Of a DNA stretch of 64,000 nucleotides, positions 13,207 through 61,429 are shown piece by piece. The stretch lies in contig CM075983.1 in the NCBI GenBank assembly GCA_038087875.1, positions 49,662,001 through 49,726,000 of the forward strand. The letters are read 5' to 3'. Made by a program: the position numbers and the translations under genes. The notes below the pieces were generated by a model that was not told where the DNA came from, did no database searches, and was given only the letters and a program-made list of their open reading frames with translations. Position 1 is the first letter of the stretch. Every line of letters begins with the position of its first letter. This stretch comes from Malacoraja senta (lineage: Eukaryota).

Positions 13207-14895
13207 ATTGTGAGAATGGGAAAACATTGGGCTCGAGTGAGTGGTTCCGAGGATCGGCCCCGCGGTATTGTATACAATAAAATGGAGTTGCAATTCCAGT
13301 GTTCGTATTCGGTGTTTGACTGAACCAGACTAGGGGGGTGAGATTAAATCCAGAATTAACAGTTTACTGAGAATGAAAGTCACCACAAAATGATTGGGAT
13401 ATGAATTTCTCAATAGCCCAAAGAAAGACGCCCAAAATTCCTCTACTGGTTAAACATATTTTCAATGAGAATTGTGTGTTTTTATTTGAAATGGTTGTGT
13501 GAATGAATTTGTAGCCTGCTTATTTTTATGCTATCAAGAATCTCTGATGACAATTCTTCCAACGTGTACCAGCAATATTTAGAATAGATTGATTTCCTTC
13601 TTAGACTTCATGAGTGTGCTGGTCATGACTCTTTTCAGGACAATAGCCAAATAATTCAAAACCATCAATCTAGAATTTCTGACTCATCAAGAAGTTATGC
13701 CCTCAGAAGTCTTTTACAGCCAATAAATAAATTTCTACCTGTGATATCATTATGTATTCTATAACTCTTAATGTGTAAGTCATTATAAACCACCAGTCTA
13801 GATTTCAACATTTACATTTATTGGGACAGGTGGTAGAGAAGAGCTGTCATTTATTTCTGCCTTGATCAATTTTTCTGGGGTATTTAGGCAATCAGTTCAG
13901 ATTCCTATTGAATTGCAACTGCCCATATGGAAGTTTTCCAACATCCTTGAAAAAGATTAAGGAGTAAGGTATTTTTACAGTCCATAGTGGATTATCCTTC
14001 CTGCTTTTTAATTCTTGAAAATTCTACCTGGAAGCAGTACACAAGGGCTAACATGAAGGAAGAGATCTCTTTTAAGACATATGATTTTTATTCAAGGCAT
14101 TAGTACTATCGAGGCCACCAGCTTCCCTTGACCAGTGGTCCCAGAAAATGGCGTCTTGGAGCAGGTGTAAAATATAGAGGCATTAATCATCACATTTTTA
14201 AATCTACAAACTATGGACACTTTTTTACTGGAGATAATTACTCACATTGCTTTCCTTCCAATTGCGGCTGGCTCATTCTTGCGCTCCTAAGAGCCTTTTG
14301 AGCAAAGATCATAGAGCGGAGCAAGTACCCACAGCGAAAAAGCCGAAGTACGTCATGGGTAATTTTTCACGCCATCTTGATATGCTGCCGCGCGATTACC
14401 GTCATGTCGTCCACATCTACAGCTCACTGACTGAATGATACAGACGTCCTGACTGACATCACACCTTTCCAATCAATTATTTTAGGATGCCTTTCTAGAG
14501 AACATGCTACTTTTTGCTTCGCCCATTTTCAAAATATAGAATTTTGGATTTGGCATTTGATTGGTACAAGGAGACTATAAAGCCCTGCAGTCTGCAGTGC
14601 TTGTTGCTGTGGCGTGGCGGGGACTTTAAATCTTCGACCGCCGGCCTACACCAACTTGAAGCCACGGTCTCTGGTGGGGAGCCACCGATTCAGGACTTAC
14701 CTTGTCTGAACATCTGGACGCCCGCAGCGGCGACTGCAGAGGGTTGTGGTCCCGACCACGGGGGAAAATGGAGGACTGGCCAAATTTTGTGCCTTCCACT
14801 ACGGTGATGAATGCTGTGGTGGATGTATGTGTTAAATTTTTATTGTGTATTGTATGTTCTTTTTTTTATTGTACCACGGCTGGCTCTGAATTTCC

Positions 14896-20903: not shown

Positions 20904-21477
20904 TAAGTTATATATAGTTTTATTTAGAGATACAGCATAGAAACAGGCCCACTGAGTCCATGTCAACCATCAATCAACCGTTCACTCTAGTTCCAGGTTT
21001 TCCCACTTTCTCAATCACTCCCTACACATCAGATGCATTTTTTTTAAACAGTCCGTACAAAGCCATATATCTTTGGAATATTTTGGATCAGAAAATTACA
21101 AGCATTAATAGACTATAAATGATTATCAAGCATTTTAATGTCCCTTTGAAAAAAATTGGTTCAGAAGATTTACATATCAATAAAAATATTCTCCAATGCC
21201 GTGCTAAAACTGAAGGAAACTGAATAGATTCATAGCAAAGATAGACACAAATAGCTGGAGTAACTCAGCGGATCAGAGCGTCCCTGCAGAAAAGGATGTG
21301 GTGACGTTTCAGGTTGAGACCTTCTCTCCAGCGATGCAGTCTGTCCAGCTGAGTTACTCCAGATTTTTGTGTCTATCTTCAATTTAAACCAGCATCTGCA
21401 GTTCCTACCTACACATAGATTCATAGCAACTTGTTTCAGCAACTTTTTCAGCACTTTAATGTTTGGCATATAGTTTG

Positions 21478-23693: not shown

Positions 23694-24306
23694 CAAAGAT
23701 CATAGAGCGTAATATATGTATGTGTGTGTGTGTGTGTGTATATATCTATATATATATATCTATATACATATTTATATGTATATTTATAAATATAATTGCC
23801 TTTATGGTTTATGTACATCTTCTGAGAAATAAGATAAATGGAGAAATAGAGCGTTGCTTTAATTCAATGTTGCTTCTGATCCATGAAAAGGAACTTTGAG
23901 ATCTATTTATCTTTATCTTGCCTCTCACACACAGGCACACACACAATCATATATATTATATATATAAATATATATATATGTTAAATTTATGCATAGTGTG
24001 TGTTAACGCAATACAAGGGAAACTGCACAAAGGAGGGGGCTAGGGAGGAAGGAAGGGAGGGAAATGGGCAGAAACAGATAGATTAAGCAGGGGGAAAACA
24101 TTTGAAAAGAAAATTAACTAAAATATGTGAATTGATAGATGAGCTACATCACACACATACTGTTCCCCTAAAACACTGATTACACTGTGAGAGGCATAAC
24201 GGAAGTTGGGTTGAGCATTCCAAGATGGCGGCCGTTAGGCCCGTTACGTACTACACCTCAGTGCATTGGATTACGTGGAGTATCTTGCTCCGCTCTATGA
24301 TCTTTG
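23694..24306. mobile_element. TIR-bounded MITE-like element containing (TG)n/(TA)n microsatellite; superfamily unassigned
   Basis: CAAAGATCATAGAGCG...CGCTCTATGATCTTTG 16-bp inverted ends. The same terminus recurs at ~14303, ~17746 and (duplicated) ~29751. Confidence 0.65.
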
Positions 24307-25720
24307 CTTTTGAGTGGATTTAATCTTTTGGAATCTCTTGTATTATTATTTATTGATTCCAACATTTTTAATTGTTTATATATTTTTATTGTTTCATTTC
24401 AGTGATATCCACAAAGTAAGATTTTTTGTTATAAAACAAAGGGAGAAATTGAAAGGTATTAGAGACATGGGTCTTCTTGTAACCAGATCTTACCATACAT
24501 GTAGGAAAAGCAATTAAGAAGACAAACAATATGCTGGCCTTACTGCAAGGAAGTTTGAGTGCAGGATAAAAGTTGTTGTACTGATGTTTAATCGATAATG
24601 TTTAATATTTTATGTGTCATTCCTGTCACTGTATGTCATGTTGTCACTTGCGGGCGGAGCACCAAGACAAATTCCTTGTATTGAATACTTGGTCAATAAA
24701 CTTATTCATTCAAACTTATTAATTCATTCATTATACAAGGCCTTAGTGAGGCTGGATATATAATATTGTGTTCGAATCTGGTCCTCTGGCATGTGAACTT
24801 GAAATTAATGATGGGCTCCAGTGAAAGTTGTTCACATTGATTATTGCAGATTAATGGCCCTGTCTCACGGTGCGAGTCCACGAGTGATCCCGAGTGAAAG
24901 AAAAAATCAAACTCGTGGTTGTCTACGAGATTCCAAGTTTATGTTCACGAGTTTAAACGAGTTCCCACGTGTATGTCTAAGTTTGCCGTTTACTTCTCAT
25001 TTCTGCGATGTACCAAGTTCCTCTCCTGAGTTACCAAGTTTTTCTCCCGAGTTACTCATCACATGGTAAAAATGATGTCATGCAGTTTTTCTTTACACTA
25101 TAAAAAGACCCAGCCTGAAGAACGATCTCGACCCGAAACATCACCTATTTCTTTTCTCCAGAGATGCTGCCTGACCAGCTGTGTTAGTCCATCATTTTGT
25201 GTCTATCTTTGGTTTAAACTAGTATCTGCAATTCCTTCCTTCAAACTTTTAGAGCAGTTTGTTTCAAGAAACAATCCTTCCAAAATTGCATTCAAAAGTC
25301 CATTTGAACTACATTTGTTCAAGGTCTGACATTAATCATTGAAAGGCATAGGCTGTTTTGTGTCGGGAGGAACTGCAGATGCTGGTTTACACCGAAGATA
25401 GCCACAAAATGCTGGAGTAACTCAGCGGGACATGCAGCATTTCTGGAGTGAAGGACAACCAATATGTATATTTATAAATATAATTGCCTTTATGGTTTAT
25501 GTCCGGTTCAGCGCTGGCCTATAGGTGAGCCAGTCGAGTCCCATCTTCAGACTGAAAAAACGTTTCGACCCTTCTCTCCAGAGATGCTGCCGGCTTGGCT
25601 GAGTTACTCCAGCTTTTTGTGTCTTGTAAGATTGTTTTATTCCCTTATTTTACTTCGGAGTCACGTGAGTGACTACGTGAAGAAGAGCCCGTCCAGCCGC
25701 ACACGCGTCATATCGTCAGA
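23766..25720 (+). repeat. Left copy of a 1,955-bp direct duplication flanking the Hero element
   Basis: Matches 29211-31165 at a constant offset of 5,445. I saw three substitutions (25140/30585, 25518/30963, 25548/30993) and no net indel. Confidence 0.97.
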
Positions 25721-28700
25721 ATCAAATACACAGGACAAGATGTTAAGAAGTCCCTTGTGCCAATAGGTGGGGAGCATTTCACGACATTCGTTGATTGTTG
25801 AGAGTGGTAGACGCTCAACATCGGGGGGGGGGGTAACCTTCAGGACAGTTGGGCACAGGACACATCATCAGTAGTGTACCCTTGCATCACTGGGTGTTTC
25901 GGCCTTTTAACACTATACCCTCAGCGCATGTCCCGTGTCAAACCGTCCCAAAGATTCACCCCGACATACTTGGGGCCCAGCATGGGTCTTTCCGCTTGAG
26001 CCAAATCCACCGGCTGCTTCTTTCAGCCGCCTCTGAGAGTGATCTTATGGTCTTCCGCAGAGCCTGACCGTGGATTCCAAGCTCCTTCAGCAGTCTGATG
26101 GTAGATGACGCAACAAATCCTCTGCATCCCACTTCAACTGGATAGACTTTGGTGTTCCAGCCACGCTGCGTTGCCTCTGCTGCAAGCTCTGCGTAGCGCA
26201 GCTTCTTACGCTCATAGGCCTCCTCAACAGAGTTCTCCCATGGAACTGTGAGCTCTATGATGTAAGCAGTCTTCTGTGAAGGGGACCAGAACACCAAGTC
26301 TGGCCTGAGGGTGGTGGAAGCAATTTCAGGTGGAAAAATTAGTTGTCGGCCGATGTCCGCCAGCATCCTCCAGTCACGGGCCCTGCATTGGCTTCCTTCT
26401 TCTGATCTGGTGGAAGGAAGTTTAGAAGTTTTCTGTCCTTCTCGGACAAAGGTTATTACCCTTAGGGGAGGGTTGCTTGCTCTCGGAGGCAAGGAGTTGG
26501 TCGCACACCGCCTGTTCTCAAGGGCTGATGCCAGGCTTTTTAGTACCTGATTATGCTGCCACGTGTATCTCCCTTGCGTGAGGCTGGTCTTGCAGCCTAC
26601 CATGATGTGTTTGAGGGTCGCTGGAGTTGGGCAGATGGCACAGGTTGGATCCTCGCCGTACCACTGATGGAGGTTCTTTGGTGATGGAAGCACGTCATAT
26701 GTCGCTCTGATGATGAAGCTGATCTTGCTTGCTTCCATTTCCCATAGTTCTTTCCAGCTGATCTTCCTCCGCTCCACACCTTCCCACTGCATCCATTGCC
26801 CCTGCTTGGCAAGAGAGACCGCCTTTGCACTTCTTGCGGCCTCCTCCTGTCGCCGCACCTCCTCAACCACCAACGTCCTCCGCTCTGATGTTGTGGCCTT
26901 TCGCCAAGTTGGTTTACTTGTCGTAAGGCCAAAGCCTCCTCTTCCCTGCTGGACTTGCCCCACTATGTCTTTGTGCCTCAGGGCTGATGAAGCTTGCTGT
27001 ACTGCATCAGATGGTGTCCACTTCCGGCCAGTTGCTAGGGGCGGCGCAACAGCACTGATGATCTTGTCTCTAGAGTCCCTCAGTGTCATCTGGAGTCTTA
27101 CTTTAGAACACTTATATTCCTCTGTTAGACTAGTGAGAGGTAGTTCCAGGACCCCTTTGCCATAGAGGCCGATGTTAGTTAGACATCGTGGGACACCGAG
27201 CCATTTCTTCACGTATGAAGTTATGGTTCGCTCCATCTTCTCCACAGTTGTTATTGGGGCTTCATAAACGGTCAGTGGCCACATTGTCCGAGGAACGAGT
27301 CCAAACTGTAGGCACCAGAGCTTCAGTTTCCCAGGCAGTAGGGTCTGATTGATGTTCTCCAGTCCATTGACAATTTCTTGCCTTAGTTGTTGCACCTGCT
27401 CTTTGTCCTTGAGACTTGCGTTATACCATCTTCCCAGGCTTTTAACTGGCTGCTCAGACACTGTTGGTATTGGGTCGTCACCAATACAGAACCTTGTGTC
27501 TCTAAGCACCCCCTTGACTATGGAGATGCTTCGAGATTTACTTGGTTTGATTTTCATTCGGGCCCACTTGATGTTCTCCTGCAGCTTTCCAAGTAGCCGC
27601 TTGGTGCATGCTGCAGTAGTGGTTAGTGTTGTCATGTCATCCATGTATGCCCTGATGGGTGGCAGACGGAGCCCAGCCCTGGTTCGTTCACCGCCCACCA
27701 CCCATTTTGAGGCCCTGATGATGACTTCCATGGCCATTGTAAAGGCCAAGGGTGAGACTGTGCAGCCTGCCATGATGCCTACTTCCAAGCGCTGCCATGT
27801 TGTACTGAAGTCAGCTGTTGTGAAGCACAGCTGCAGGTCTTGGTAATATTTCTTGACCAGTGTGGTGATGAGCTCTGGTACATGGAAAAAGGCAAAAGAT
27901 TCCCAAAGGAGTTCATGGGGAACTGAACCAAATGCATTGGCCAGATCGAGGAAGATCACATGTAGGTCTCTCTTGTCCTTCTTAGCTGCTTGGATCTGGT
28001 GCCAGATCATGCTTGTATGCTCCAAGCAACCCGAAAATCCTGGAATTCCTGCTTTCTGTACAGATGTATCAATGTACTTGTTTGTTACCAGATAGGTGGA
28101 CAGCCTTTGTGATACAATGCTAAAAAAGATTTTTCCCTCGACGTTGTGGAGACATATTGGCCGGAATTGGCTGATGTCTGACGAATCCTTTTCTTTAGGT
28201 ATTAGCACGCCGCCGGCCCTTCGCCAAGCCTTAGGTATTGTTTGCTTCTTCCACACCACCCTCATGAGCTTCCATAGAAAGCGTAACACATCTGGTGCGT
28301 TCTTATAGAGCTTGTATGGTACTCCGTTTGGCCCCGGAGCTGAAGCTGCTCTTGCTCGCCGGACCGTGTTCTCCACCTCTTTCCATCTCGGAGGGCTGGT
28401 GTCCATGTTGAATTCAGGTGGTTGAATAGGCGGGATGTCATGTGGGATGACCAACTGCTCATGCCTTTTCGTGTCTTTGTGGGCCTTTTCCAGGTGTTCC
28501 TCCAATTCCTGTTTTGATGTTTTCAAAGTTCCACTTTTTTCCTTTGCGAAGAGGTCTTTGATGAACTTGAAAGGGTCTTTATAGAACCGTGTTCTTGTGT
28601 GTTCTTTCTTCTTGCGAAGTTTCCTCAAGTTCTCTGCTTTTCGCAAGGTTGCCAATCGGTTCTTGATGTCCTCTTGGAGTAGCATGAGACCTTCTCTCTC

Positions 28701-29210
28701 TGCGTCAGTTGCTTTTTTCCATTGCTTTTTCAACTGTCTCCTCTCTCTGATTAGCCTCTCGATCTCCTGCTGCCTCCTGGACTTGATTGGTGTTGGTAAT
28801 TTCTTTCCACCTCTCCCTTTACTCACCCCAAACCGTTCTTCTCCATAGCTGTAGATTGTGTTGCCCATCCTTTCAAGCTTTTCCACTGCTGTGCCCGTTT
28901 GTTGCTCCAAGATATGTATAAGGTCACTGTTGACCGTCTCCCACTCTTTCTTTTCAACAGCCTTGGGCCATTTCACTCCAGGTTTGTGCCCTTTGATCTT
29001 TCCCTCCAATGGAGGTCTTTGTAGTTGTTGCGTGGGCTCCTCCACCGGCATTTCTGTGCTTGTATCACCCTCTTCAGTGACATGGGTGCTGATGCTCTGC
29101 GAACTTTGGTTTGTGTCCCGTCGCTGTGCTTCACTCGACTGATTTGACTGGTTGCTTCGTAAGAAGTACTGGTCAATGCGAGGCCCATGTTTCTGCTCTC
29201 TCAAGCAGAA
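25721..29210 (-). mobile_element. Hero-clade (R2 superfamily) non-LTR retrotransposon, 5'-truncated, 3,490 bp
   Basis: Boundaries are defined by the flanking duplication. Single RT-RLE ORF plus ~235-nt 3' UTR, no poly(A) tail. Confidence 0.9.
25956..29204 (-). CDS. Reverse transcriptase - CCHC zinc knuckle - PD-(D/E)xK restriction-like endonuclease polyprotein (1082 aa open frame, N-terminus missing; the frame is called from a TTG)
   Basis: RT motifs SAPGPNG, FRPI, QKAG, FLDLANAFGSVPH, GIMAGCTVSPLAF, AYMDD, KSLG; knuckle CAIC..TLKHIMVGC; endonuclease RPDLV...IIELTVPWE...ERKKLRY..VEVGCRG. The GIMAGC/YMDD/ELTVPWE pattern is typical of Hero elements. Confidence 0.95.
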   Translation of the reverse strand: MREQKHGPRIDQYFLRSNQSNQSSEAQRRDTNQSSQSISTHVTEEGDTSTEMPVEEPTQQLQRPPLEGKIKGHKPGVKWPKAVEKKEWETVNSDLIHILEQQTGTAVEKLERMGNTIYSYGEERFGVSKGRGGKKLPTPIKSRRQQEIERLIRERRQLKKQWKKATDAEREGLMLLQEDIKNRLATLRKAENLRKLRKKKEHTRTRFYKDPFKFIKDLFAKEKSGTLKTSKQELEEHLEKAHKDTKRHEQLVIPHDIPPIQPPEFNMDTSPPRWKEVENTVRRARAASAPGPNGVPYKLYKNAPDVLRFLWKLMRVVWKKQTIPKAWRRAGGVLIPKEKDSSDISQFRPICLHNVEGKIFFSIVSQRLSTYLVTNKYIDTSVQKAGIPGFSGCLEHTSMIWHQIQAAKKDKRDLHVIFLDLANAFGSVPHELLWESFAFFHVPELITTLVKKYYQDLQLCFTTADFSTTWQRLEVGIMAGCTVSPLAFTMAMEVIIRASKWVVGGERTRAGLRLPPIRAYMDDMTTLTTTAACTKRLLGKLQENIKWARMKIKPSKSRSISIVKGVLRDTRFCIGDDPIPTVSEQPVKSLGRWYNASLKDKEQVQQLRQEIVNGLENINQTLLPGKLKLWCLQFGLVPRTMWPLTVYEAPITTVEKMERTITSYVKKWLGVPRCLTNIGLYGKGVLELPLTSLTEEYKCSKVRLQMTLRDSRDKIISAVAPPLATGRKWTPSDAVQQASSALRHKDIVGQVQQGRGGFGLTTSKPTWRKATTSERRTLVVEEVRRQEEAARSAKAVSLAKQGQWMQWEGVERRKISWKELWEMEASKISFIIRATYDVLPSPKNLHQWYGEDPTCAICPTPATLKHIMVGCKTSLTQGRYTWQHNQVLKSLASALENRRCATNSLPPRASNPPLRVITFVREGQKTSKLPSTRSEEGSQCRARDWRMLADIGRQLIFPPEIASTTLRPDLVFWSPSQKTAYIIELTVPWENSVEEAYERKKLRYAELAAEATQRGWNTKVYPVEVGCRGFVASSTIRLLKELGIHGQALRKTIRSLSEAAERSSRWIWLKRKDPCWAPSMSG

Positions 29211-31165
29211 ACATATTTATATGTATATTTATAAATATAATTGCCTTTATGGTTTATGTACATCTTCTGAGAAATAAGATAAATGGAGAAATAGAGCGTT
29301 GCTTTAATTCAATGTTGCTTCTGATCCATGAAAAGGAACTTTGAGATCTATTTATCTTTATCTTGCCTCTCACACACAGGCACACACACAATCATATATA
29401 TTATATATATAAATATATATATATGTTAAATTTATGCATAGTGTGTGTTAACGCAATACAAGGGAAACTGCACAAAGGAGGGGGCTAGGGAGGAAGGAAG
29501 GGAGGGAAATGGGCAGAAACAGATAGATTAAGCAGGGGGAAAACATTTGAAAAGAAAATTAACTAAAATATGTGAATTGATAGATGAGCTACATCACACA
29601 CATACTGTTCCCCTAAAACACTGATTACACTGTGAGAGGCATAACGGAAGTTGGGTTGAGCATTCCAAGATGGCGGCCGTTAGGCCCGTTACGTACTACA
29701 CCTCAGTGCATTGGATTACGTGGAGTATCTTGCTCCGCTCTATGATCTTTGCTTTTGAGTGGATTTAATCTTTTGGAATCTCTTGTATTATTATTTATTG
29801 ATTCCAACATTTTTAATTGTTTATATATTTTTATTGTTTCATTTCAGTGATATCCACAAAGTAAGATTTTTTGTTATAAAACAAAGGGAGAAATTGAAAG
29901 GTATTAGAGACATGGGTCTTCTTGTAACCAGATCTTACCATACATGTAGGAAAAGCAATTAAGAAGACAAACAATATGCTGGCCTTACTGCAAGGAAGTT
30001 TGAGTGCAGGATAAAAGTTGTTGTACTGATGTTTAATCGATAATGTTTAATATTTTATGTGTCATTCCTGTCACTGTATGTCATGTTGTCACTTGCGGGC
30101 GGAGCACCAAGACAAATTCCTTGTATTGAATACTTGGTCAATAAACTTATTCATTCAAACTTATTAATTCATTCATTATACAAGGCCTTAGTGAGGCTGG
30201 ATATATAATATTGTGTTCGAATCTGGTCCTCTGGCATGTGAACTTGAAATTAATGATGGGCTCCAGTGAAAGTTGTTCACATTGATTATTGCAGATTAAT
30301 GGCCCTGTCTCACGGTGCGAGTCCACGAGTGATCCCGAGTGAAAGAAAAAATCAAACTCGTGGTTGTCTACGAGATTCCAAGTTTATGTTCACGAGTTTA
30401 AACGAGTTCCCACGTGTATGTCTAAGTTTGCCGTTTACTTCTCATTTCTGCGATGTACCAAGTTCCTCTCCTGAGTTACCAAGTTTTTCTCCCGAGTTAC
30501 TCATCACATGGTAAAAATGATGTCATGCAGTTTTTCTTTACACTATAAAAAGACCCAGCCTGAAGAACGATCTCGACCCGAAACGTCACCTATTTCTTTT
30601 CTCCAGAGATGCTGCCTGACCAGCTGTGTTAGTCCATCATTTTGTGTCTATCTTTGGTTTAAACTAGTATCTGCAATTCCTTCCTTCAAACTTTTAGAGC
30701 AGTTTGTTTCAAGAAACAATCCTTCCAAAATTGCATTCAAAAGTCCATTTGAACTACATTTGTTCAAGGTCTGACATTAATCATTGAAAGGCATAGGCTG
30801 TTTTGTGTCGGGAGGAACTGCAGATGCTGGTTTACACCGAAGATAGCCACAAAATGCTGGAGTAACTCAGCGGGACATGCAGCATTTCTGGAGTGAAGGA
30901 CAACCAATATGTATATTTATAAATATAATTGCCTTTATGGTTTATGTCCGGTTCAGCGCTGGTCTATAGGTGAGCCAGTCGAGTCCCATCTTGAGACTGA
31001 AAAAACGTTTCGACCCTTCTCTCCAGAGATGCTGCCGGCTTGGCTGAGTTACTCCAGCTTTTTGTGTCTTGTAAGATTGTTTTATTCCCTTATTTTACTT
31101 CGGAGTCACGTGAGTGACTACGTGAAGAAGAGCCCGTCCAGCCGCACACGCGTCATATCGTCAGA
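29211..31165 (+). repeat. Right copy of the 1,955-bp direct duplication
   Basis: As above; this copy continues into the uninterrupted DIRS element. Confidence 0.97.
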
Positions 31166-31529
31166 TGCTTAGCGTAGTGCCGATGTGTTTGGAGTGAGCA
31201 GAGCTCCTCCAAACCGGTAAGAAAAAAGCCTGAAGGTAAATCTTTACTTATGTTTTTCAGGTCGATTTCTTCAGAGGACTTGTAGTTGGGAAAACACAAG
31301 TCAGAATGAAGAAAGGATTTAGAGGTGTACCGCAGGTAACGCAAGAGGTCTGCGAGTAGCGAGCGCCCTTTTTAATTTTTAAAAAACGGTTTCAAATATT
31401 TACCGTTGTAGCGCTATTAGAGTGCATGAGAAATAGGCCGTGTGGCCAGTAGACTGAAAGTCAGACCAGAGGATCCCGATTCAGGCAGATAGTTAGCTAT
31501 ATTTAGAACCGCGTTGCGAGGCAGCGCAG

Positions 31530-32030
31530 TGAATGCCTGGGGAATGTCCAGGCTTAGCGTTGGCCCATAGGAGAGCCAGCGTATGAAGTGCCTGGGGAAG
31601 GTCCAGCTTAGCGTTGTCTCTACAGGAGCCAACGCAGGGAGTACCTGGTGGAGGTCCAGGTTTAGCGTTGGTCTATAGGAGAGCCAGTGCATGGAGTGCT
31701 TTAGAAGGTCCGGCTCAGCCTTGGCCTAAGGGAGAGCCAGCGTAGGGAGTACTTGGGAAAGTCCGGTTCAGCGCTGGCCTACAGGTGAGCCAGTGTGAGC
31801 AATGCCTGGTTAAAAGCATTTTTTATGCGTTGGTCTACAGGAGAGCCAGTGCCAACTATGTCTGGAGAGAACAGTTTAAGCGTTGGCCTACAGGTGAGCC
31901 AGCGCCAGCAGCACCTGAAAGAGGGTTGCCTATGCATGGGCCTACAGGAGAGCCCGCACGGCGAGCACCTGGAAAAGTGTTTACTGTGCGTAGGCCTATG
32001 GGAGAGCCAGCGCTAGATACACCTGAAACA
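31530..32030 (+). repeat. Degenerate ~60-bp tandem repeat in the 5' part of the DIRS element
   Basis: Recurrent ggtccagcttagcgttggcctataggagagccagcg-like unit, about 8 copies. Confidence 0.8.
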
Positions 32031-33737
32031 GGATGTCAATTCGCCCCTCCATGAGGATTATTTCATACATAGATTCAGTAAACAAATCATATGAGGACTC
32101 GAGCCCAATAACAGAGCCCAAAGGACCAGAATTGACACAATATATCAAAGTTGTGGTTCCAAAAATATCAGGGGAACCATTGGGAGATAAATTAACTATG
32201 TCAATAAAATACTTACTCTCCCAACAGCTCCAAGGTTCTAACCATGTATGTGCTGTCTACAAATATGAAACCCACAGTATTGAGCATTATAAGCAGTCTC
32301 AGCGGGGATAGGGTGTTGAAATTACTGGTCAGGCATTACGGCTTTTTGACCAAAGGTTGGATGGAGAGCATGTGTATATATCACAACAAGGTTGAATTAG
32401 CACTCATGTGTAGTGCGCACTTTGAAATAAACTGTATTTATAAAAGTGCTATAAGACCTGTTATATACCCTAAGTTTGTGGGCTCTGTACACCATCTAAT
32501 ATTTAAATTGCCTAATAATCTGTTTTAGAAAGAATCTAGCCAAAAAAGGAATGATCCTGTGTGATTGGCAGATCAAATTAAAGGCAGTTTTCCCAACCAA
32601 TATGTGGTGACTGGGGATAGTGAAGGATCAAATTGGTCTTTCCCATATGTGCGTTGTAGGCGCAGTCCTCCTGAGGTATGTGGAGGCTACAATATTCCAC
32701 TAAGATCAGGGGATAACAATTGCCATAGGCAAACCCTGAGGTAGGAGGTCTGGTTCTGTAAGAAACATATTAAATGTTTTACATTTACAAGTTGGAAAAG
32801 ATTACAATTCTTGCTAAAAGAATAGTAATTTGATATATTTATACTGTACAGTATTGTGGGGTTTAGAATTTAATTCTACCCATATTTGGTTTCTCCTACT
32901 ACGGTATTTGAAACACAGTTATTGATTATTTGGGTTCCATTATTAAATGAGAACACATGATTGTGATTCTGCCCAAGGATTAAGGCTGCATTTAATTGGA
33001 AGTTATATTAAGCTCATTACAGAGCACCAATCCTCAATTAGGCAAGAAGCAAGCCTGCTTTGCAAACTATTGCTTATTTCCAGCTGTAGAATTTAGACTG
33101 CTGAATTATCAGCATTTACAGTAAGCATGGATAGAGGAATGGAGAATACAATTTAGGGCAATTTTGCCAGGCCATGTATTTGCCAGTTGCAGTTATTACT
33201 GGAATATTATAATGAATCATGAGTATCTCAAATGCCTCCAGAGAGATTCTGGTTGAACACCTTCCATTATGCTACACACTAATTGTAGTGCTCTAAGTTC
33301 AGGTCATACTTATAAGTATTTCCAGCTGTGGAGGTACATGGAATGTGGAGAAAGTACCTTTGATCCAATAACAAGGGATCATTAATGAGAGTTTTAGGAA
33401 CATTTTATGGCCTAAAGCTTATTGCTCTAATATGCAAAGTTTGCATGTTTAGGTATAGATTGACAAAACTACGGAATAGAACGTATGTTAATCATTCGAG
33501 TGGTATGAGTCAGAATCTTGTAAAGTCTGGCTAACGTGATCTGGACCTGGTGTTTAACAGAAATATTTGGTTGGCAATCTATCTACGAGGTAGATTCAAT
33601 ATAGTTGCAGATTCAAGGTCATGTAATTCAATGATAATACAGAATGGATGTTGGATCGTGACAAATTTAATAATATTGTTGCACGATTGATGACTTGTTT
33701 GCAATCCAGACTTAACCACCAATTACCTAAATATGTG

Positions 33738-34534
33738 TTAAAGAAGGAACTGCAGATGCTGGAAAATCGAAGGTACACAAAAATGCTGGAGAAACTCAGC
33801 GGGTGCAGCAGCATCTATGGAGCGAAGGAAATAGGTAACGTTTCGGGCCGAAACCCTTCTTCAGACTGATAGGGGGTGGGGAGAAGAAAGGAAAAAAGGA
33901 AAAAGGCGGAGGAGGAGCCCGAGGGCTGGGGGGGGGGGGGGGGGAGGAGACAACCAGATGGCTGATGAAGGGAGGGGACAGCAAGGGCTAGCAGAATTGG
34001 GAGAATTCAATGTTCAAGCCCCCAGGATGTAGACTGCCCAAGCGGAATATGAGGTGCATTTCCTCCAATTTACGGTGTTGCTCGCTGTGGCCATGGAGGA
34101 GACCCAGGACAGAGAGGTCAGATACGGAATGGGAGGGGGAGTTGAAGTGCTGAGCCACCGGGAGTTCAGGTTGGTTATTGCGGACCGACCGGAGGTGTTC
34201 GGCGAAACGATCGCCAAGCCTCCGCTTGGTCTCACCGATGTAGATCAGCTGGCATCCAGAGCAGCGAATGCATCTACATCCTGGGGGCTTGAACATTGAA
34301 TTCTCCCAATTCTGCTAGCCCTTGCTGTCCCCTCCCCTTCATCAGCCATCTAGTTGTCTCCTCCCCCCCCCCCCCCCAGCCCTCGGGCTCCTCCTCCGCC
34401 TTTTTCCTTTTTTCCTTTCTTCTCCCCACCCCCTATCAGTCTGAAGAAGGGTTTCGGCCCGAAACGTTACCTATTTCCTTCGCTCCATAGATGCTGCTGC
34501 ACCCGCTGAGTTTCTCCAGCATTTTTGTGTACCT
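33738..34534 (-). mobile_element. Penelope-like element 3' fragment (GIY-YIG endonuclease plus pseudo-LTR) with an inverted partial copy, inserted in the DIRS element
   Basis: ORF 33988-34296: CIRCSGCQLIYIGETKRRLGDRFAEH...HFNSPSH...EEMHLIFRLGSLHPGGLN. Arms 33771-34033 and 34273-34534 are inverted copies. tacctaaatat flanks both sides (33724-33734, 34530-34540). Confidence 0.9.
34441..34470 (+). ncRNA. Minimal hammerhead-ribozyme motif in a Penelope-like pseudo-LTR (mirror copy on minus strand at 33837-33864)
   Basis: CUGAAGA-A-GGGU-UUCG-GCCC-GAAAC-GUU: hammerhead core, UUCG-capped stem II and loopless palindromic stem III (ACGU). Stem I is weak. Confidence 0.6.
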
Positions 34535-35974
34535 AAATATCTGTCATGGAAACCTGATCCTGGGGCAGTAGCGGTGGATGTTTCTCGCTGCATTGGGGTA
34601 GAATGTTTGTATACATCTTCTCCATTTTGTCTCATTTAGTCAGTATATACAGAAGATCAAACAGGACTCCGCTTCGGGAATATTGGTGGTACCAGATTGG
34701 ATCTACAAAACCATGGTACCCTCAGGTGTTAAAAATGATCACAAAGCCTCTTATGATTTCCCAAACAGAATTAATCTGTTTGTGGACCCTATAACTGATG
34801 ATTCACATCCTTTACATAATCGTATTGGTTTGTTGATTTGCAGATTCTAAGGAGTGCTATATATCGGAAGAGGACTATCAGATTGTACTGTGGATATTAT
34901 CGCAACCTGGAGGGATATTACCCAGAAGTAGTACATTTCTTACATAAGGAAATGGGATATGTTTTGCTTAAAGCAGAATATTACATATCACACTATAGAC
35001 ATCTCAGTAGGGTTAGAGTTTCTGTAAACTCTTTATTTTATTAGCAGTTAAGCTATAGTGCTATGAATACTGCAAGGAGTGCCTTTACTGCATATCTATG
35101 GAGGAATCAGAATCAAATCTTATAGGGTTACACCCTTTGGTCTGCAGATTTATGAAAGGATTTTTCAATTCTTAGCCTCCTAGACACAGGTATACAAAAA
35201 TCGGGAATGTAAGAGATGTGTTATGTTTTTTCGTTAATGGACTCCTATTACAGTGCTGTCCTTGGCTTAAATTACCATTAAGGTAGTCAAGCTCAGGGCA
35301 CTGGTTTAGCACAGAGAGTGCAAACATTGCAGAAACTATGAATAGACATGCTGGAAAGACCAACAGATACTATTGTGTTCTATGTCTATGATTTGCTTAA
35401 ACAGAGTAGACCTGGAATCACAGGATGTAAGTTGGGGTTTTCAGCATATCCTACGGATCCACGTCTATGTGTGGTATCACATTTACAATGTTAGATTGAA
35501 GCCACCAGAACCTTAAAGAGGTGCAGTATCAGTATTTTATTAGCCATAAATAACTGCATAAGAAAGTGTCGGTTCAGACTATTTAAAAATGGCTGAAGCA
35601 GGTGTTGCTTGATGCAGGTATTGATACTGACAAATTTAAATCTCATTTCACCAGGGCACCATCAATATTGACGGCCAAGGAATTGGATGTTCCAATAGAA
35701 CATATCCTCGCGGCCGCAGGCATAAGTGAAAGAATTTCACAAGTATTACCATAAGGAGATTATAATACCTGTGGTTATTTGGTGGTGCTATTTTGGATTT
35801 AGTATTAAATATTCCTCTTGTGATAAAGGGGTTACTATTATGGTGATAAATTAACCATAACTGGTTGCATCCATGTTGTGGTTATGCATTGTTGATTGCT
35901 TTACTTATTTAGAGTCAATCAATGCAGTGAGACGCCTGGATTTGAATCTACGGCGTGAAATCAGAGCTTTTTAA

Positions 35975-36087
35975 TCTTCACGTAGTCACTCACGTGACTC
36001 CGAAGTAAAATAGTAAGATTAAACGAGAACTTACCAGTTTGAAGTTTGATCTTTATTTTATGAGGAGTTACAATGAGGGATTACGTG
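35975..36087 (+). other. DIRS internal complementary region (ICR)
   Basis: The first 38 nt are the exact reverse complement of 31091-31128. The remainder is the reverse complement of 36231-36303 with one substitution and a 2-nt indel. Confidence 0.92.
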
Positions 36088-37579
36088 CCCACCGCTCCCA
36101 CCCTCATAAAAGATCGAGCTGGTAGTTCTAGTCTTTATATATCTTACTATCATACTTCAGTAATTGTTGTCTGTGATTTCACTCCGCTGCTTTGAAGATT
36201 GACGCGTATGCGGCTGGACGGGCTCTTCTTCACGTAATCCCTCATCGTAACTCCTCATAAAATAAAGATCAAACTTCAAACTGGTAAGCTCGTTTAATCT
36301 TACTAATTTATCTCTCATCAAAACGTTGGTAAACCTCTAACAAAAAGATTAGGTAAATTGAACATTAACGTTATTTTTTCCCTCGACAGCAAGGTCCATA
36401 GACCAGAGGGATAGCAGTGTGTGTCTCTCTACTCACCCAGTATGTCCGTCAGAGCAGCCGTCCCACCGTCGCGACTTAAACTGTATAAAAAGCAACGGCT
36501 CAAAACATTGCTGATTGGGCAGATCTGCCCAGAAACCACCCCTTTCACCACACCCCAGCCCTGGGAAACAAAGTTTTCAGAGCCCTACAGTCACCCCAGC
36601 CCGCCCGCGAACCTCTGAATGAAAGACAAAGCTCAAACTCTGCACCGAGGTCAGGATCGAACCCGGGTCTCTGGTGCTGCCAGGATGATTAAAAAATATC
36701 AATTAAAAGAATTGAAAGCAAAAGCTACTGATGATAAATTTTTATCAGTTAATAAACCGCAAAAGCAACTTGAGAATGTTTAATTGATAAAAGATTTCCT
36801 GTCTGAATTGGTTTAAATCTGGTATTTTTACGCATCTTTGGTATGTGCATAATGAGGTATGGAAGGGACAGCTCTGACCTTTAGTCGCTCTTGTTATGCA
36901 CTCAACATGCACGACTATTTGGTTGTTTTTTAATCTTTATCCTGAGATAGGAGAAATAAACAAAAAGATCGCGATTGACATGCTGTGAGTCGTCATTTAT
37001 CCATGCAGAAATTCTCACGCGGTTAATATAATTGTTAGCGGACGCTTTTTAAATCCTTCTTCCCCATTTCGTCACAATAACCATTTTAATTTTGCGCATT
37101 GTTATTCTTGTTACCCTGGATAAAAGATATTTATCCCATAAATAAGAACCAATAATAGTGAGGCGCTTGCTTCAGATTCTGCTGTTCCTCTGATTCTCTC
37201 TCCTGTCCTCCTCTCTCTCTCCCTTCTCCCCCTCCCTCTCCCCATGGGCAATCACTACCAAAGTGTCTGCCCACACAGTCAGTACACCTATCATACACTT
37301 GTCTCCCGTACTAAGTCACCCCAACTCCCTCCACTCCCCTCCCCTCCTCCCCCTACCACCTTTCCCTCCCAACTCCAGTCCCGACCCCCTGGGAAACTGA
37401 AGGGAGCGACAATCAACTGGCACGGATACAAATGTCATACACAAGAAAGGGCAGATGCTGGTTGACAAAAAGTGAACACAGTGCTGGAGTAACACAAAGA
37501 CGCAGCAGAATTTTGGAAACGTCATCCCGTCACCCATTCCTTCTCTCCAGAGATGCTACCTGTCCCGCTGAGTTAAAGA

Positions 37580-59910: not shown

Positions 59911-61429
59911 GGATGTTAAAAACCACACAGTAGTATTTGACGATTATATAATTCTCCTGATATTTTCTCTCAAGTAACACTATTACAAAAAAAAAACAGG
60001 ACATTACTTCAGGATCATTTTAGAAAGAAGTTCAAAGAATGGGTACCAAATTTGGCCATACAATTCTGGAAATTGAATTGGGCAAATCTGTAATGTGTAT
60101 AACTAAAATTTGTAATATATTGTAATGTTATAATGCATGAAAAATGGGCAAGTTTGTAATATATTAGCTTACATACTAGAGAACCATGATGGGAAAAGTG
60201 GTCAAGATAATGAAGTAACCTAAAGGTCATGTTCGGAGAGGCGATAAATAGATTTAGGAAGTGCTTAAATCGCAAGTCCTTGCTTTCTTCCTCCTTCCCC
60301 TCCCCTTCCCAGCTCTCACAGCCTACTGTCTCCGCCTCTTCCTTTCTTTTTCCCGCCCCCCCCCCGACATCAGTCTGAAGAAGGGTCTCGACCCAAAACG
60401 TCGCCTATTCCTTTGCTCCATAGATGCTGCCTCACCAGCTGAGTTTCTCCAGCTTTTTTGTCTACCATTTATTTTTCCAGCATCTGCAGTTCTTTCTTAA
60501 ACAAATCGCAAGGCATAGTCAGCTGGAGTGAAGATAAACATAAGATGTTAGAACCCAGGCAGAGGGCTATATAACTGATAAGATAAGAATTGCTTTATGA
60601 CATCCATTTGCAGAACAAATGACAGAATGCTTTTCTGATCAACAAGGAGAGGCCCTAGCAGTCAGTTAGCTAGAGGTAATTCCAGCAGTAATAAAACAAA
60701 GATGAAATACTACATGGAAATGGTGATTATTGGTGAATTATTTCATAAATGTAAAATTTGCGTATACCCATTGTGTTGCCAACCATTAAATCACTACATC
60801 TTGTGAGTCAGCGAAGCACTTCGGGTCCTCTCAGAGTGGTTCCCAGTTTATACTGTTAAGGCTATGAATAAACTAACTTGTTCAAGAAACTCAACAATGC
60901 TCTACGATATTTTTTTGTGTGCTGTCGTGATCTGAGCCATAATTAAGAGAGTGATTGAGCCCCACGTAAAATCCAGATTTAGGGTCCAGGTCAAACATAC
61001 AATTCCCTCAAAATAGGCGTTCATTATTGGTGAAATATGTTTACTTACTCAAATTCGGTACATTATATTTTCTGTGCTTTGTGCACACAGCATTAAATTA
61101 AATCCTTCTCTGTTCAAACTGTTTCAGTTTCCAACTGTGTTTGCAATTTCTGTTACAAATGGCAACTTTTAGAGGTTACAGAGACAAGTTCTTACTCAAA
61201 ATATACTTTTGAGGTAGTTCTGTTATAATGTGATAGTTATGTTCCTAAGTAACCTAGTGTAATGGAAGAGCATTATAAAAATAAATGTGTCAACGGAGAA
61301 AAGGAGGCTAAGAGTTTCCGGCTCACAATAACAAACTTTTATTTATCCACAGAATATACAAAAATAAAGGTCTTTTTAACACCTACATTTATTTTTGTTA
61401 TTACAGGCTAAAAATACTAACGTCTGTAT

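What the first reader, a model, noticed from the sequence alone, without database searches (positions are those of the whole stretch)
25462..25534. 73-nt patchwork copied from two distant local sites, one at the duplication breakpoint
Seen: between two inverted Penelope-like pseudo-LTR pieces (~25367-25455 and ~25571-25625), 25462-25502 is an exact 41-nt copy of 23774-23814. 25501-25534 is a 33/34 copy of DIRS-internal 31761-31794. The two pieces join through a 2-nt gt overlap. The patch is in both A copies (30907-30979). In the pre-duplication locus the donors lay ~1.7 kb upstream and ~0.8 kb downstream. Donor 1 starts only 8 nt from the later duplication breakpoint (23766). Inference: a templated insertion (polymerase-theta-like or RT template jumping) that postdates DIRS and predates Hero, with the same TA-rich site serving twice as a strand-invasion landing site.
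Basis: partly seen in the sequence, partly recalled or inferred. Interest (0 to 1): 0.7.

Follow-up and report, generated by a model that had tools for sequence, protein, structure and literature searches.

The report
Two-piece locally copied DNA repair patch
A 73-base filler stitched from two nearby sequences sits in the loop of a hairpin-forming repeat; it looks like an ordinary scar of error-prone break repair, and one source lies in the same easily melted TA-rich spot that a later 2-kb duplication also used.

Summary
25462-25502 equals 23774-23814 (41/41). 25501-25534 matches 31761-31794 (33/34). The pieces overlap by "gt". The patch recurs at 30907-30979 (72/73) in the second copy of a 1,955-bp duplication.

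The anatomy needs one correction. The patch lies inside one copy of a ~130-nt Penelope-associated repeat, not between two pieces. It replaces about 19 family positions, and that copy resumes collinearly at 25535-25555. An inverted partial copy follows, so the patch sits in the loop of a ~55-bp stem.

Context shows the copying direction. Donor 1 continues a TA-rich tract. Donor 2 is one unit of a ~54-nt tandem array inside a decayed DIRS1-like element.

Best reading (0.6): serial microhomology-primed template switching while a break was repaired. It came before the duplication and probably after the DIRS insertion. Copy lengths and kilobase donor distances are atypical for classic polymerase-theta inserts.

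Both the donor 1 start (23774) and the later duplication start (23766) fall in the least stable 50-mer within ~11 kb.

This is a new member of a known kind, of modest interest.

The parts
25456..25461 (+). 6 nt (caacca) of unassigned origin at the left junction; no microhomology with the flank of donor 1
25462..25502 (+). patch piece 1, an exact 41-nt copy of 23774-23814; contains the 16-nt perfect palindrome 25467-25482
25501..25534 (+). patch piece 2, a 33/34 copy of 31761-31794; shares 'gt' with piece 1 and, by the family alignment, 'gt' with the resumed repeat
23774..23814 (+). donor 1, continuous with the TA-rich tract on its left and with unique sequence on its right
31761..31794 (+). 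donor 2, one unit of the ~54-nt tandem array 31518-32032; the other units match the patch at 27/34 or fewer positions
30907..30979 (+). second copy of the patch in duplicate A2, 72/73 (C>T at 30963)
29219..29259 (+). copy of donor 1 carried in duplicate A2
25362..25455 (+). left part of the interrupted ~130-nt Penelope-associated repeat copy; also the left arm of the hairpin
25535..25555 (+). collinear continuation of the same repeat copy after the patch; about 19 family positions are missing between the two parts
25557..25625 (-). inverted partial copy of the same repeat family, the right arm of the ~55-bp stem
23747..23797 (.). TA-rich tract, the least stable 50-mer in about 11 kb; holds the duplication start (23766) and the donor 1 start (23774)
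23766..25720 (+). duplicate A1, 1,955 bp
29211..31165 (+). duplicate A2, 3 differences from A1
25721..29210 (-). non-LTR retrotransposon between the duplicates, with a 1,082-aa ORF carrying RVT_1; the 'Hero' label was not tested
31166..36310 (+). body of a decayed DIRS1-like element, whose first 76 nt are 25645-25720 / 31090-31165; inverted termini, internal complementary region 35975-36087, and methyltransferase-like and tyrosine-recombinase-like remnants

Best explanation
The patch is a scar of error-prone repair in the germline. A break, or a stalled nascent strand, arose in the loop of a hairpin-forming inverted pair of Penelope-associated repeats. About 19 nt of the repeat were lost. A free 3' end then copied 34 nt from a tandem-array unit of the DIRS1-like element 0.8 kb away and 41 nt from the TA-rich tract 1.6 kb away on the other side. 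It switched template through a 2-nt 'gt' overlap. It rejoined the repeat through a second 'gt' on the right, and through 6 unassigned nucleotides without microhomology on the left. This pattern is serial microhomology-primed template switching, closer to MMBIR/FoSTeS or long-range synthesis-dependent end joining than to classic short polymerase-theta inserts. What is shown: the copies, their borders, the overlap, intact donors, the loss of family positions, the hairpin context, and presence in both duplicates. What is inferred: the break, the polymerase, the direction of synthesis, and the local DIRS copy as donor. The event predates the 1,955-bp duplication that came with the non-LTR element. 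If the donor is local, it postdates the DIRS insertion. The later duplication began 8 nt from the donor 1 start, in the most easily melted stretch of the neighbourhood. That tract therefore probably offered single-stranded template twice.
For: The copies are exact or near-exact with abrupt borders (E 3e-14 and 1e-8). Direction of copying: the 41-mer continues the TA-rich tract at 23774 but is foreign inside the repeat copy. The 34-mer is in register with the ~54-nt array and is also foreign in the repeat. The repeat copy is collinear across the patch with about 19 positions missing, which is a deletion-plus-insertion scar. There is a 2-nt overlap between the pieces, and the family consensus '...GGGT|CGAG' gives a 2-nt overlap on the right. 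Both donors are in direct orientation, on either side, within 1.7 kb. The arms flanking the patch fold into a ~55-bp stem, dG -54.3, z -8.8. A similar foldback at 21232-21415 has no filler. The window holds only about four other short repeats at 94% identity or more that are not TE families. The pairwise divergences order consistently: DIRS tips vs internal complementary region 4/120, patch vs donors 1/75, A1 vs A2 3/1955. The repeat copy is only about 80-85% like its relatives, so the patch is much younger than the repeat insertion. 23747-23797 is the least stable 50-mer (dG -41.6 vs -65.9 +/- 7.3). TA repeats are known DNA-unwinding and break-prone elements handled by microhomology-mediated end joining (MMEJ) (PMC13645644).
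Against: DIRS elements are multi-copy in this genome (unchecked notes), so the 34-mer could come from another copy or from DIRS cDNA. Donor 1 lies inside a possible hAT-like MITE (23694-24306), which might be multi-copy. The left junction has no microhomology. An alternative ancestral layout would make 25535-25560 a third copied piece. The twofold use of the TA-rich site rests on two events and was noticed after the fact.
Confidence: 0.6

Rival explanations
1. This is a captured-fragment or cDNA patch with at least one non-local source. A break was filled with a piece of DIRS cDNA or of another DIRS copy, and perhaps with a piece of another copy of a MITE. This would resemble class 2 templated sequence insertions, possibly made by a retroelement reverse transcriptase jumping between RNAs or along a local read-through transcript.
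For: The 34-mer differs from the local unit at one position, where other local units carry the patch's base. DIRS elements are multi-copy in this genome. The patch lies 111 nt from the DIRS end, so it could date from the time of DIRS integration; 4/120 and 1/75 are not distinguishable. Both donors have the same orientation, as expected for one transcript. Class 2 insertions show microdeletion, microhomology and untemplated bases, as seen here (PMC5110952).
Against: Piece 1 matches a site 1.6 kb away exactly, and that site looks native in its context. A donor within 0.8 kb for piece 2 would be an unlikely coincidence if the source were elsewhere. There is no poly(A) or target-site duplication at the patch borders.
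Confidence: 0.22
2. The 73-mer is part of a pre-formed repeat subfamily. A Penelope-associated foldback that already carried the filler transposed here, so nothing was copied locally.
For: Foldback dimers of this family recur in the window with various joints. Genome-wide counts are not available.
Against: No other copy in the 64-kb window carries any part of the filler. No indexed run holds the patch words (weak evidence). This reading needs the coincidence that both filler sources lie next door and are native there.
Confidence: 0.08
3. This is an assembly or consensus artefact, either a chimeric join inside a repeat-rich region or a false duplication.
For: Read support could not be examined. 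The region is dense in repeats.
Against: The patch appears in two assembled copies that differ at 3 positions, one of them inside the patch. All borders are clean and the flanking repeat is collinear.
Confidence: 0.04

Closest known systems
[quoted passage not shown]
   Same: A small deletion comes with an insert identical to nearby DNA. Donors are intact. Priming uses minimal homology with reiterated primer-template switching. The scars are inherited through the germline.
   Different: Published inserts average about 10 bp, with 85% primed within 10 bp of the break and only about 3% from distant sites. Here the pieces are 41 and 34 nt, from 1.6 and 0.8 kb away on opposite sides. Polymerase dependence cannot be tested.
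MMBIR/FoSTeS templated insertions and complex breakpoints (PMC8421209, PMC5104497)
   Same: There are serial template switches at 2-nt microhomologies. Templates are nearby, pieces are tens of nucleotides long, and a structure-forming sequence is involved.
   Different: MMB-TIs as defined there are inverted copies from within 100 bp. Here both pieces are direct and kilobase-distant, and no copy-number change accompanied the patch.
Class 2 templated sequence insertion polymorphisms (PMC5110952)
   Same: A patch at a repaired break shows microdeletion, microhomology and a few unassigned bases, with no target-site duplication and no poly(A).
   Different: Those patches come from distant, transcribed loci and appear to be RNA-derived. 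Here both candidate donors are local.
Patchwork filler DNA at plant and Drosophila break junctions (own knowledge; filler DNA at Drosophila CNV breakpoints is the subject of PMC4056370, listed but not read)
   Same: The fillers are composites of several short stretches copied from neighbouring sequence.
   Different: This comparison rests on recall and was not checked in detail here.

Membership tests
Templated insertion at a repaired break (generic) | The insert is identical or near-identical to another sequence that remains intact (copy, not cut-and-paste) | tested here: met
   41/41 and 33/34; both donors are still in place and native in their contexts
Templated insertion at a repaired break (generic) | Loss of recipient sequence at the insertion point | tested here: met
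   About 19 family positions are missing between 25455 and 25535 in the alignment with 11 other copies. This rests on the family pattern, not on an empty orthologous site.
Templated insertion at a repaired break (generic) | Microhomology at template switches | tested here: met
   2-nt 'gt' between the pieces; 2-nt 'gt' at the right junction, inferred from the family alignment; none at the left junction
Classic TMEJ (polymerase theta) insert | Template within a few to tens of bp of the break; insert of about 10 bp | tested here: not met
   Donors are 1,647 and 781 nt away; pieces are 41 and 34 nt, against the published distribution (PMC5068794)
Classic TMEJ (polymerase theta) insert | Dependence on polymerase theta | not testable with these tools
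   Needs genetics
MMB-TI (MMBIR templated insertion as defined in PMC8421209) | Inverted copy of a template within 100 bp | tested here: not met
   Both pieces are direct copies from kilobase distance
Dispersed repeat unit | The same 73-mer with the same junctions occurs in many unrelated loci | tested here: inconclusive
   It is in the two duplicate copies only within 64 kb. No indexed run holds its words. The one metagenome hit to 21 nt of piece 1 is a chance match in a bacterial gene. The genome itself could not be searched.
DIRS1-like retroelement (host of donor 2) | Inverted termini plus an internal region complementary to both outer tips; tyrosine recombinase; methyltransferase-like domain | tested here: met
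   25645-25718 vs rc 36193-36265, 86.7%. 25646-25683 = rc 35975-36012, 100%. 36231-36310 = rc 36006-36087, 95%. Recombinase-like piece scored 0.95 and Dam-like piece 0.91 in the atlas. Pfam found nothing in the short pieces.
Penelope-like element terminal repeat (flanking family) | A repeat associated with a GIY-YIG-bearing element; hammerhead ribozyme motif | tested here: inconclusive
   The same repeat flanks a GIY-YIG remnant at 33991-34314 (Pfam E 0.03; atlas 0.95). No hammerhead match in Rfam.

The most novel reading that the evidence does not exclude
The TA-rich, palindrome-bearing tract at 23747-23797 is a recurrent landing pad for free 3' ends. It first served a repair strand that copied 41 nt from it. 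It later served the cDNA end of a non-LTR retrotransposon, which primed there and re-copied 1,955 bp. If so, the 5'-end resolution of this retrotransposon and templated patching are the same microhomology-primed invasion reaction, and DNA-unwinding elements would predict where both occur across this genome. Other unchecked notes report several more templated copies in the same genome.
Probability: 0.2. Interest if true: 0.55.

Novelty: new member of a known kind. Interest (0 to 1): 0.3.

Why it matters
Fixed templated patches record which repair routes act in a germline where no genetics is available. This patch is unusually legible. It has two pieces, both donors preserved nearby, a datable order of events (DIRS, patch, duplication) and a structural reason for the break (a hairpin loop). 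Its link to the later 2-kb duplication through one TA-rich unwinding element gives a concrete, countable prediction for a genome-wide survey. On its own it is an ordinary mutation scar with no sign of function.

Tried and rejected

2. The look-up of sequencing runs on the patch listed no holder. For the 3-kb stretch, at most 0.39 of the words were held, by low-coverage contigs of several organisms, which is uninformative.

3. A metagenome scan for 21 nt of piece 1 gave one chance match in a bacterial gene.

4. The search of earlier findings by sequence was blank.

5. Rfam found no hammerhead ribozyme in the repeat copies. My recollection that the family holds such a core stays unsupported.

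6. Pfam found nothing in the short DIRS pieces.

7. No template was found in the window for the 6-nt 'caacca'.

8. I considered and rejected reading the 41-nt direct repeats as a target-site duplication around 23815-25461. That would split one collinear repeat copy by coincidence.

9. Chance was rejected on the E-values.

10. I built no patch-free ancestral sequence, because the stretch is retroelement-derived.

Full report
**Observation**

I re-read the four places and compared them base by base.
- 25462-25502 is identical to 23774-23814 (41/41).
- 25501-25534 matches 31761-31794 at 33/34. The mismatch is T at 25522 against C at 31782.
- In both cases identity stops abruptly on both sides.
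- The pieces share 'gt' at 25501-25502.
- 30907-30979 repeats the 73-mer at 72/73.

Within the window the two matches have BLAST E-values of 3e-14 and 1e-8. A scan for all short repeats at 94% identity or more found only a handful that are not TE-family matches. Such copies are therefore not background.

**Layout of the locus**
- 23766-25720 (A1) and 29211-31165 (A2) are 1952/1955 identical.
- Between them lies a minus-strand element with a 1,082-aa ORF that carries RVT_1.
- In the pre-duplication order, donor 1 lay 1,647 nt upstream of the patch and donor 2 lay 781 nt downstream.

**The host of donor 2**

Donor 2 is one unit of a ~54-nt tandem array at 31518-32032. The other units match the patch at 27/34 positions or fewer.

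The array lies inside a DIRS1-like element.
- The tip 25646-25683 is the exact reverse complement of 35975-36012.
- The other tip, 36231-36310, is 95% complementary to 36006-36087.
- The termini are inverted repeats of each other at 86.7%.
- Broken frames include a Dam-methyltransferase-like piece and a tyrosine-recombinase-like piece.
- Pfam saw nothing in the short pieces.

The element runs from 25645 to 25720 and then from 31166 to 36310, so the duplication includes its first 76 nt.

Aligning the flanks with eleven other copies of the ~130-nt repeat family gives a different picture from 'two inverted pieces with a spacer'.
- 25362-25455 covers the family from its start to '...GAAGG'.
- 25535-25555 ('CGAGTCCCATCTTCAGACTGA') continues the same copy, in the same orientation and in the right order.
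- About 19 family positions are missing in between. They are replaced by six unassigned bases plus the 73-mer.
- The inverted partial copy is 25557-25625.

Folded as single-stranded DNA, the arms 25395-25453 and 25570-25628 make a ~55-bp stem with the patch in the loop (dG -54.3 kcal/mol, z -8.8).

A similar foldback at 21232-21415 has no filler. That copy also allows a second ancestral layout, in which 25535-25560 would be a third copied piece. I regard this as less likely because of the collinearity, but it is not excluded.

The family flanks a GIY-YIG remnant at 33991-34314. Rfam found no hammerhead in any copy.

**Direction and mechanism**

- The 41-mer continues a TA-rich tract.
- The 34-mer is in register with its array.
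- Both are foreign inside the repeat copy.

So copying went from the donors to the patch, and both donors remain intact.

The junctions are as follows.
- Between the pieces there is a 2-nt overlap.
- On the right there is a 2-nt 'gt' overlap, inferred from the family's '...GGGT|CGAG'.
- On the left there is no microhomology, only six bases with no identifiable template.

This is the signature of serial microhomology-primed template switching during repair. The missing homology on the left fits slightly better with synthesis primed from the right end (donor 2 first, then donor 1) and a final end-joining step on the left. That direction is an inference.

The published records compare as follows.
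- Polymerase-theta inserts in C. elegans average about 10 bp. About 85% are primed within 10 bp of the break and about 3% come from distant sites (PMC5068794, PMC4490562).
- MMBIR-type insertions, as defined in PMC8421209, are inverted copies from within 100 bp.
- Class 2 templated sequence insertions come from distant, apparently RNA-derived sources (PMC5110952).
- Complex breakpoints with successive switches are also described at the aberrant end of long-tract gene conversion (PMC5104497).

The patch here, with 41 and 34 nt in direct orientation from 1.6 and 0.8 kb away, shares the logic of all of these but fits none of the narrow definitions. I file it under the generic kind, not as a polymerase-theta product.

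**Order of events**
- The patch is in both duplicates, so it predates the duplication.
- The pairwise divergences order as DIRS tips vs internal complementary region 4/120, patch vs donors 1/75, and A1 vs A2 3/1955. This agrees with DIRS first, then patch, then duplication, but the first two figures are not statistically separable.
- The repeat copy is only about 80-85% like its relatives, so the patch did not arise when that repeat inserted.
- 'Postdates DIRS' holds only if the local copy is the donor. Unchecked notes report other DIRS copies in this genome.

**The TA-rich site**

In the roughly 11-kb pre-duplication neighbourhood, 23747-23797 is the most AT-rich and least stable 50-mer (dG -41.6 against a mean of -65.9 +/- 7.3). 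It holds a 16-nt perfect palindrome.

Both the start of the later duplication (23766) and the start of donor 1 (23774) fall inside it. TA repeats are known unwinding and cruciform-forming elements whose breaks are handled by microhomology-mediated joining (PMC13645644).

So there is a physical reason for double use. The inference still rests on two events and was noticed after the fact.

**What could not be done**
- No indexed run holds the patch words.
- A metagenome scan gave one chance hit.

Donor 1 may lie inside a hAT-like MITE, which adds to that uncertainty.

**Verdict**

The feature is real and correctly measured. It is best read as a two-piece, locally templated repair patch in a hairpin loop (0.6). 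The main rival is a non-local or cDNA source for at least one piece (0.22).

It is a new member of a known kind and of modest interest. The most useful lead is the shared TA-rich landing site. The scan has other unchecked notes of templated copies in the same genome.

Noticed in passing
window 23694-24306: Perfect 16-nt inverted termini (CAAAGATCATAGAGCG at 23694-23709 on the + strand and 24291-24306 on the - strand), starting with a hAT-like CAAAG. The flanking 8-mers match 5/8. Related ends occur at 14303 and 17745, where subterminal similarity extends about 90 nt. This may be a hAT-type MITE that contains the TA-rich tract, donor 1 and the duplication start. If it is multi-copy, donor 1 may not be unique.
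   Followed up: partly
window 25140/30585, 25518/30963, 25548/30993: Two of the three A1/A2 differences lie 30 nt apart, in or next to the patch within the hairpin loop. Both are the derived state in A2, judged against donor 2 and the repeat family. The third is a CpG transition in A1. Clustering by chance has p of about 0.09. It might reflect error-prone copying through the hairpin, or nothing.
   Followed up: partly
window 21232-21415: A foldback dimer of the same Penelope-associated repeat, with the two arms abutting and no filler. It is a natural comparator for the interrupted copy at 25362-25625.
   Followed up: partly
window 33771-34534: A young inverted pair (268 nt, 98%) around a GIY-YIG endonuclease remnant (33991-34314, minus strand), nested inside the decayed DIRS1-like element. 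It is a palindromic Penelope-like 3' fragment.
   Followed up: partly
window 31518-32032: A ~54-nt tandem array of about 9 units at 70-77% identity, in the 5' part of the DIRS1-like element. Whether it belongs to the family or expanded locally is unknown.
   Followed up: no
window 60366-60400 and other repeat copies: The repeat family contains CTGAAGA, then a short palindromic stem, then GAAAC. From memory this resembles the minimal hammerhead cores of Penelope-like elements, and the patch removes the GAAAC part in its copy. Rfam gave no hammerhead match at E up to 10.
   Followed up: partly
window 25464-25766: A 100-aa ATG ORF starts inside the patch and runs through the repeat arm and the DIRS tip into the non-LTR element. 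It is most likely spurious.
   Followed up: no
They and their A1 twin were kept out of all later searches.
   Followed up: no
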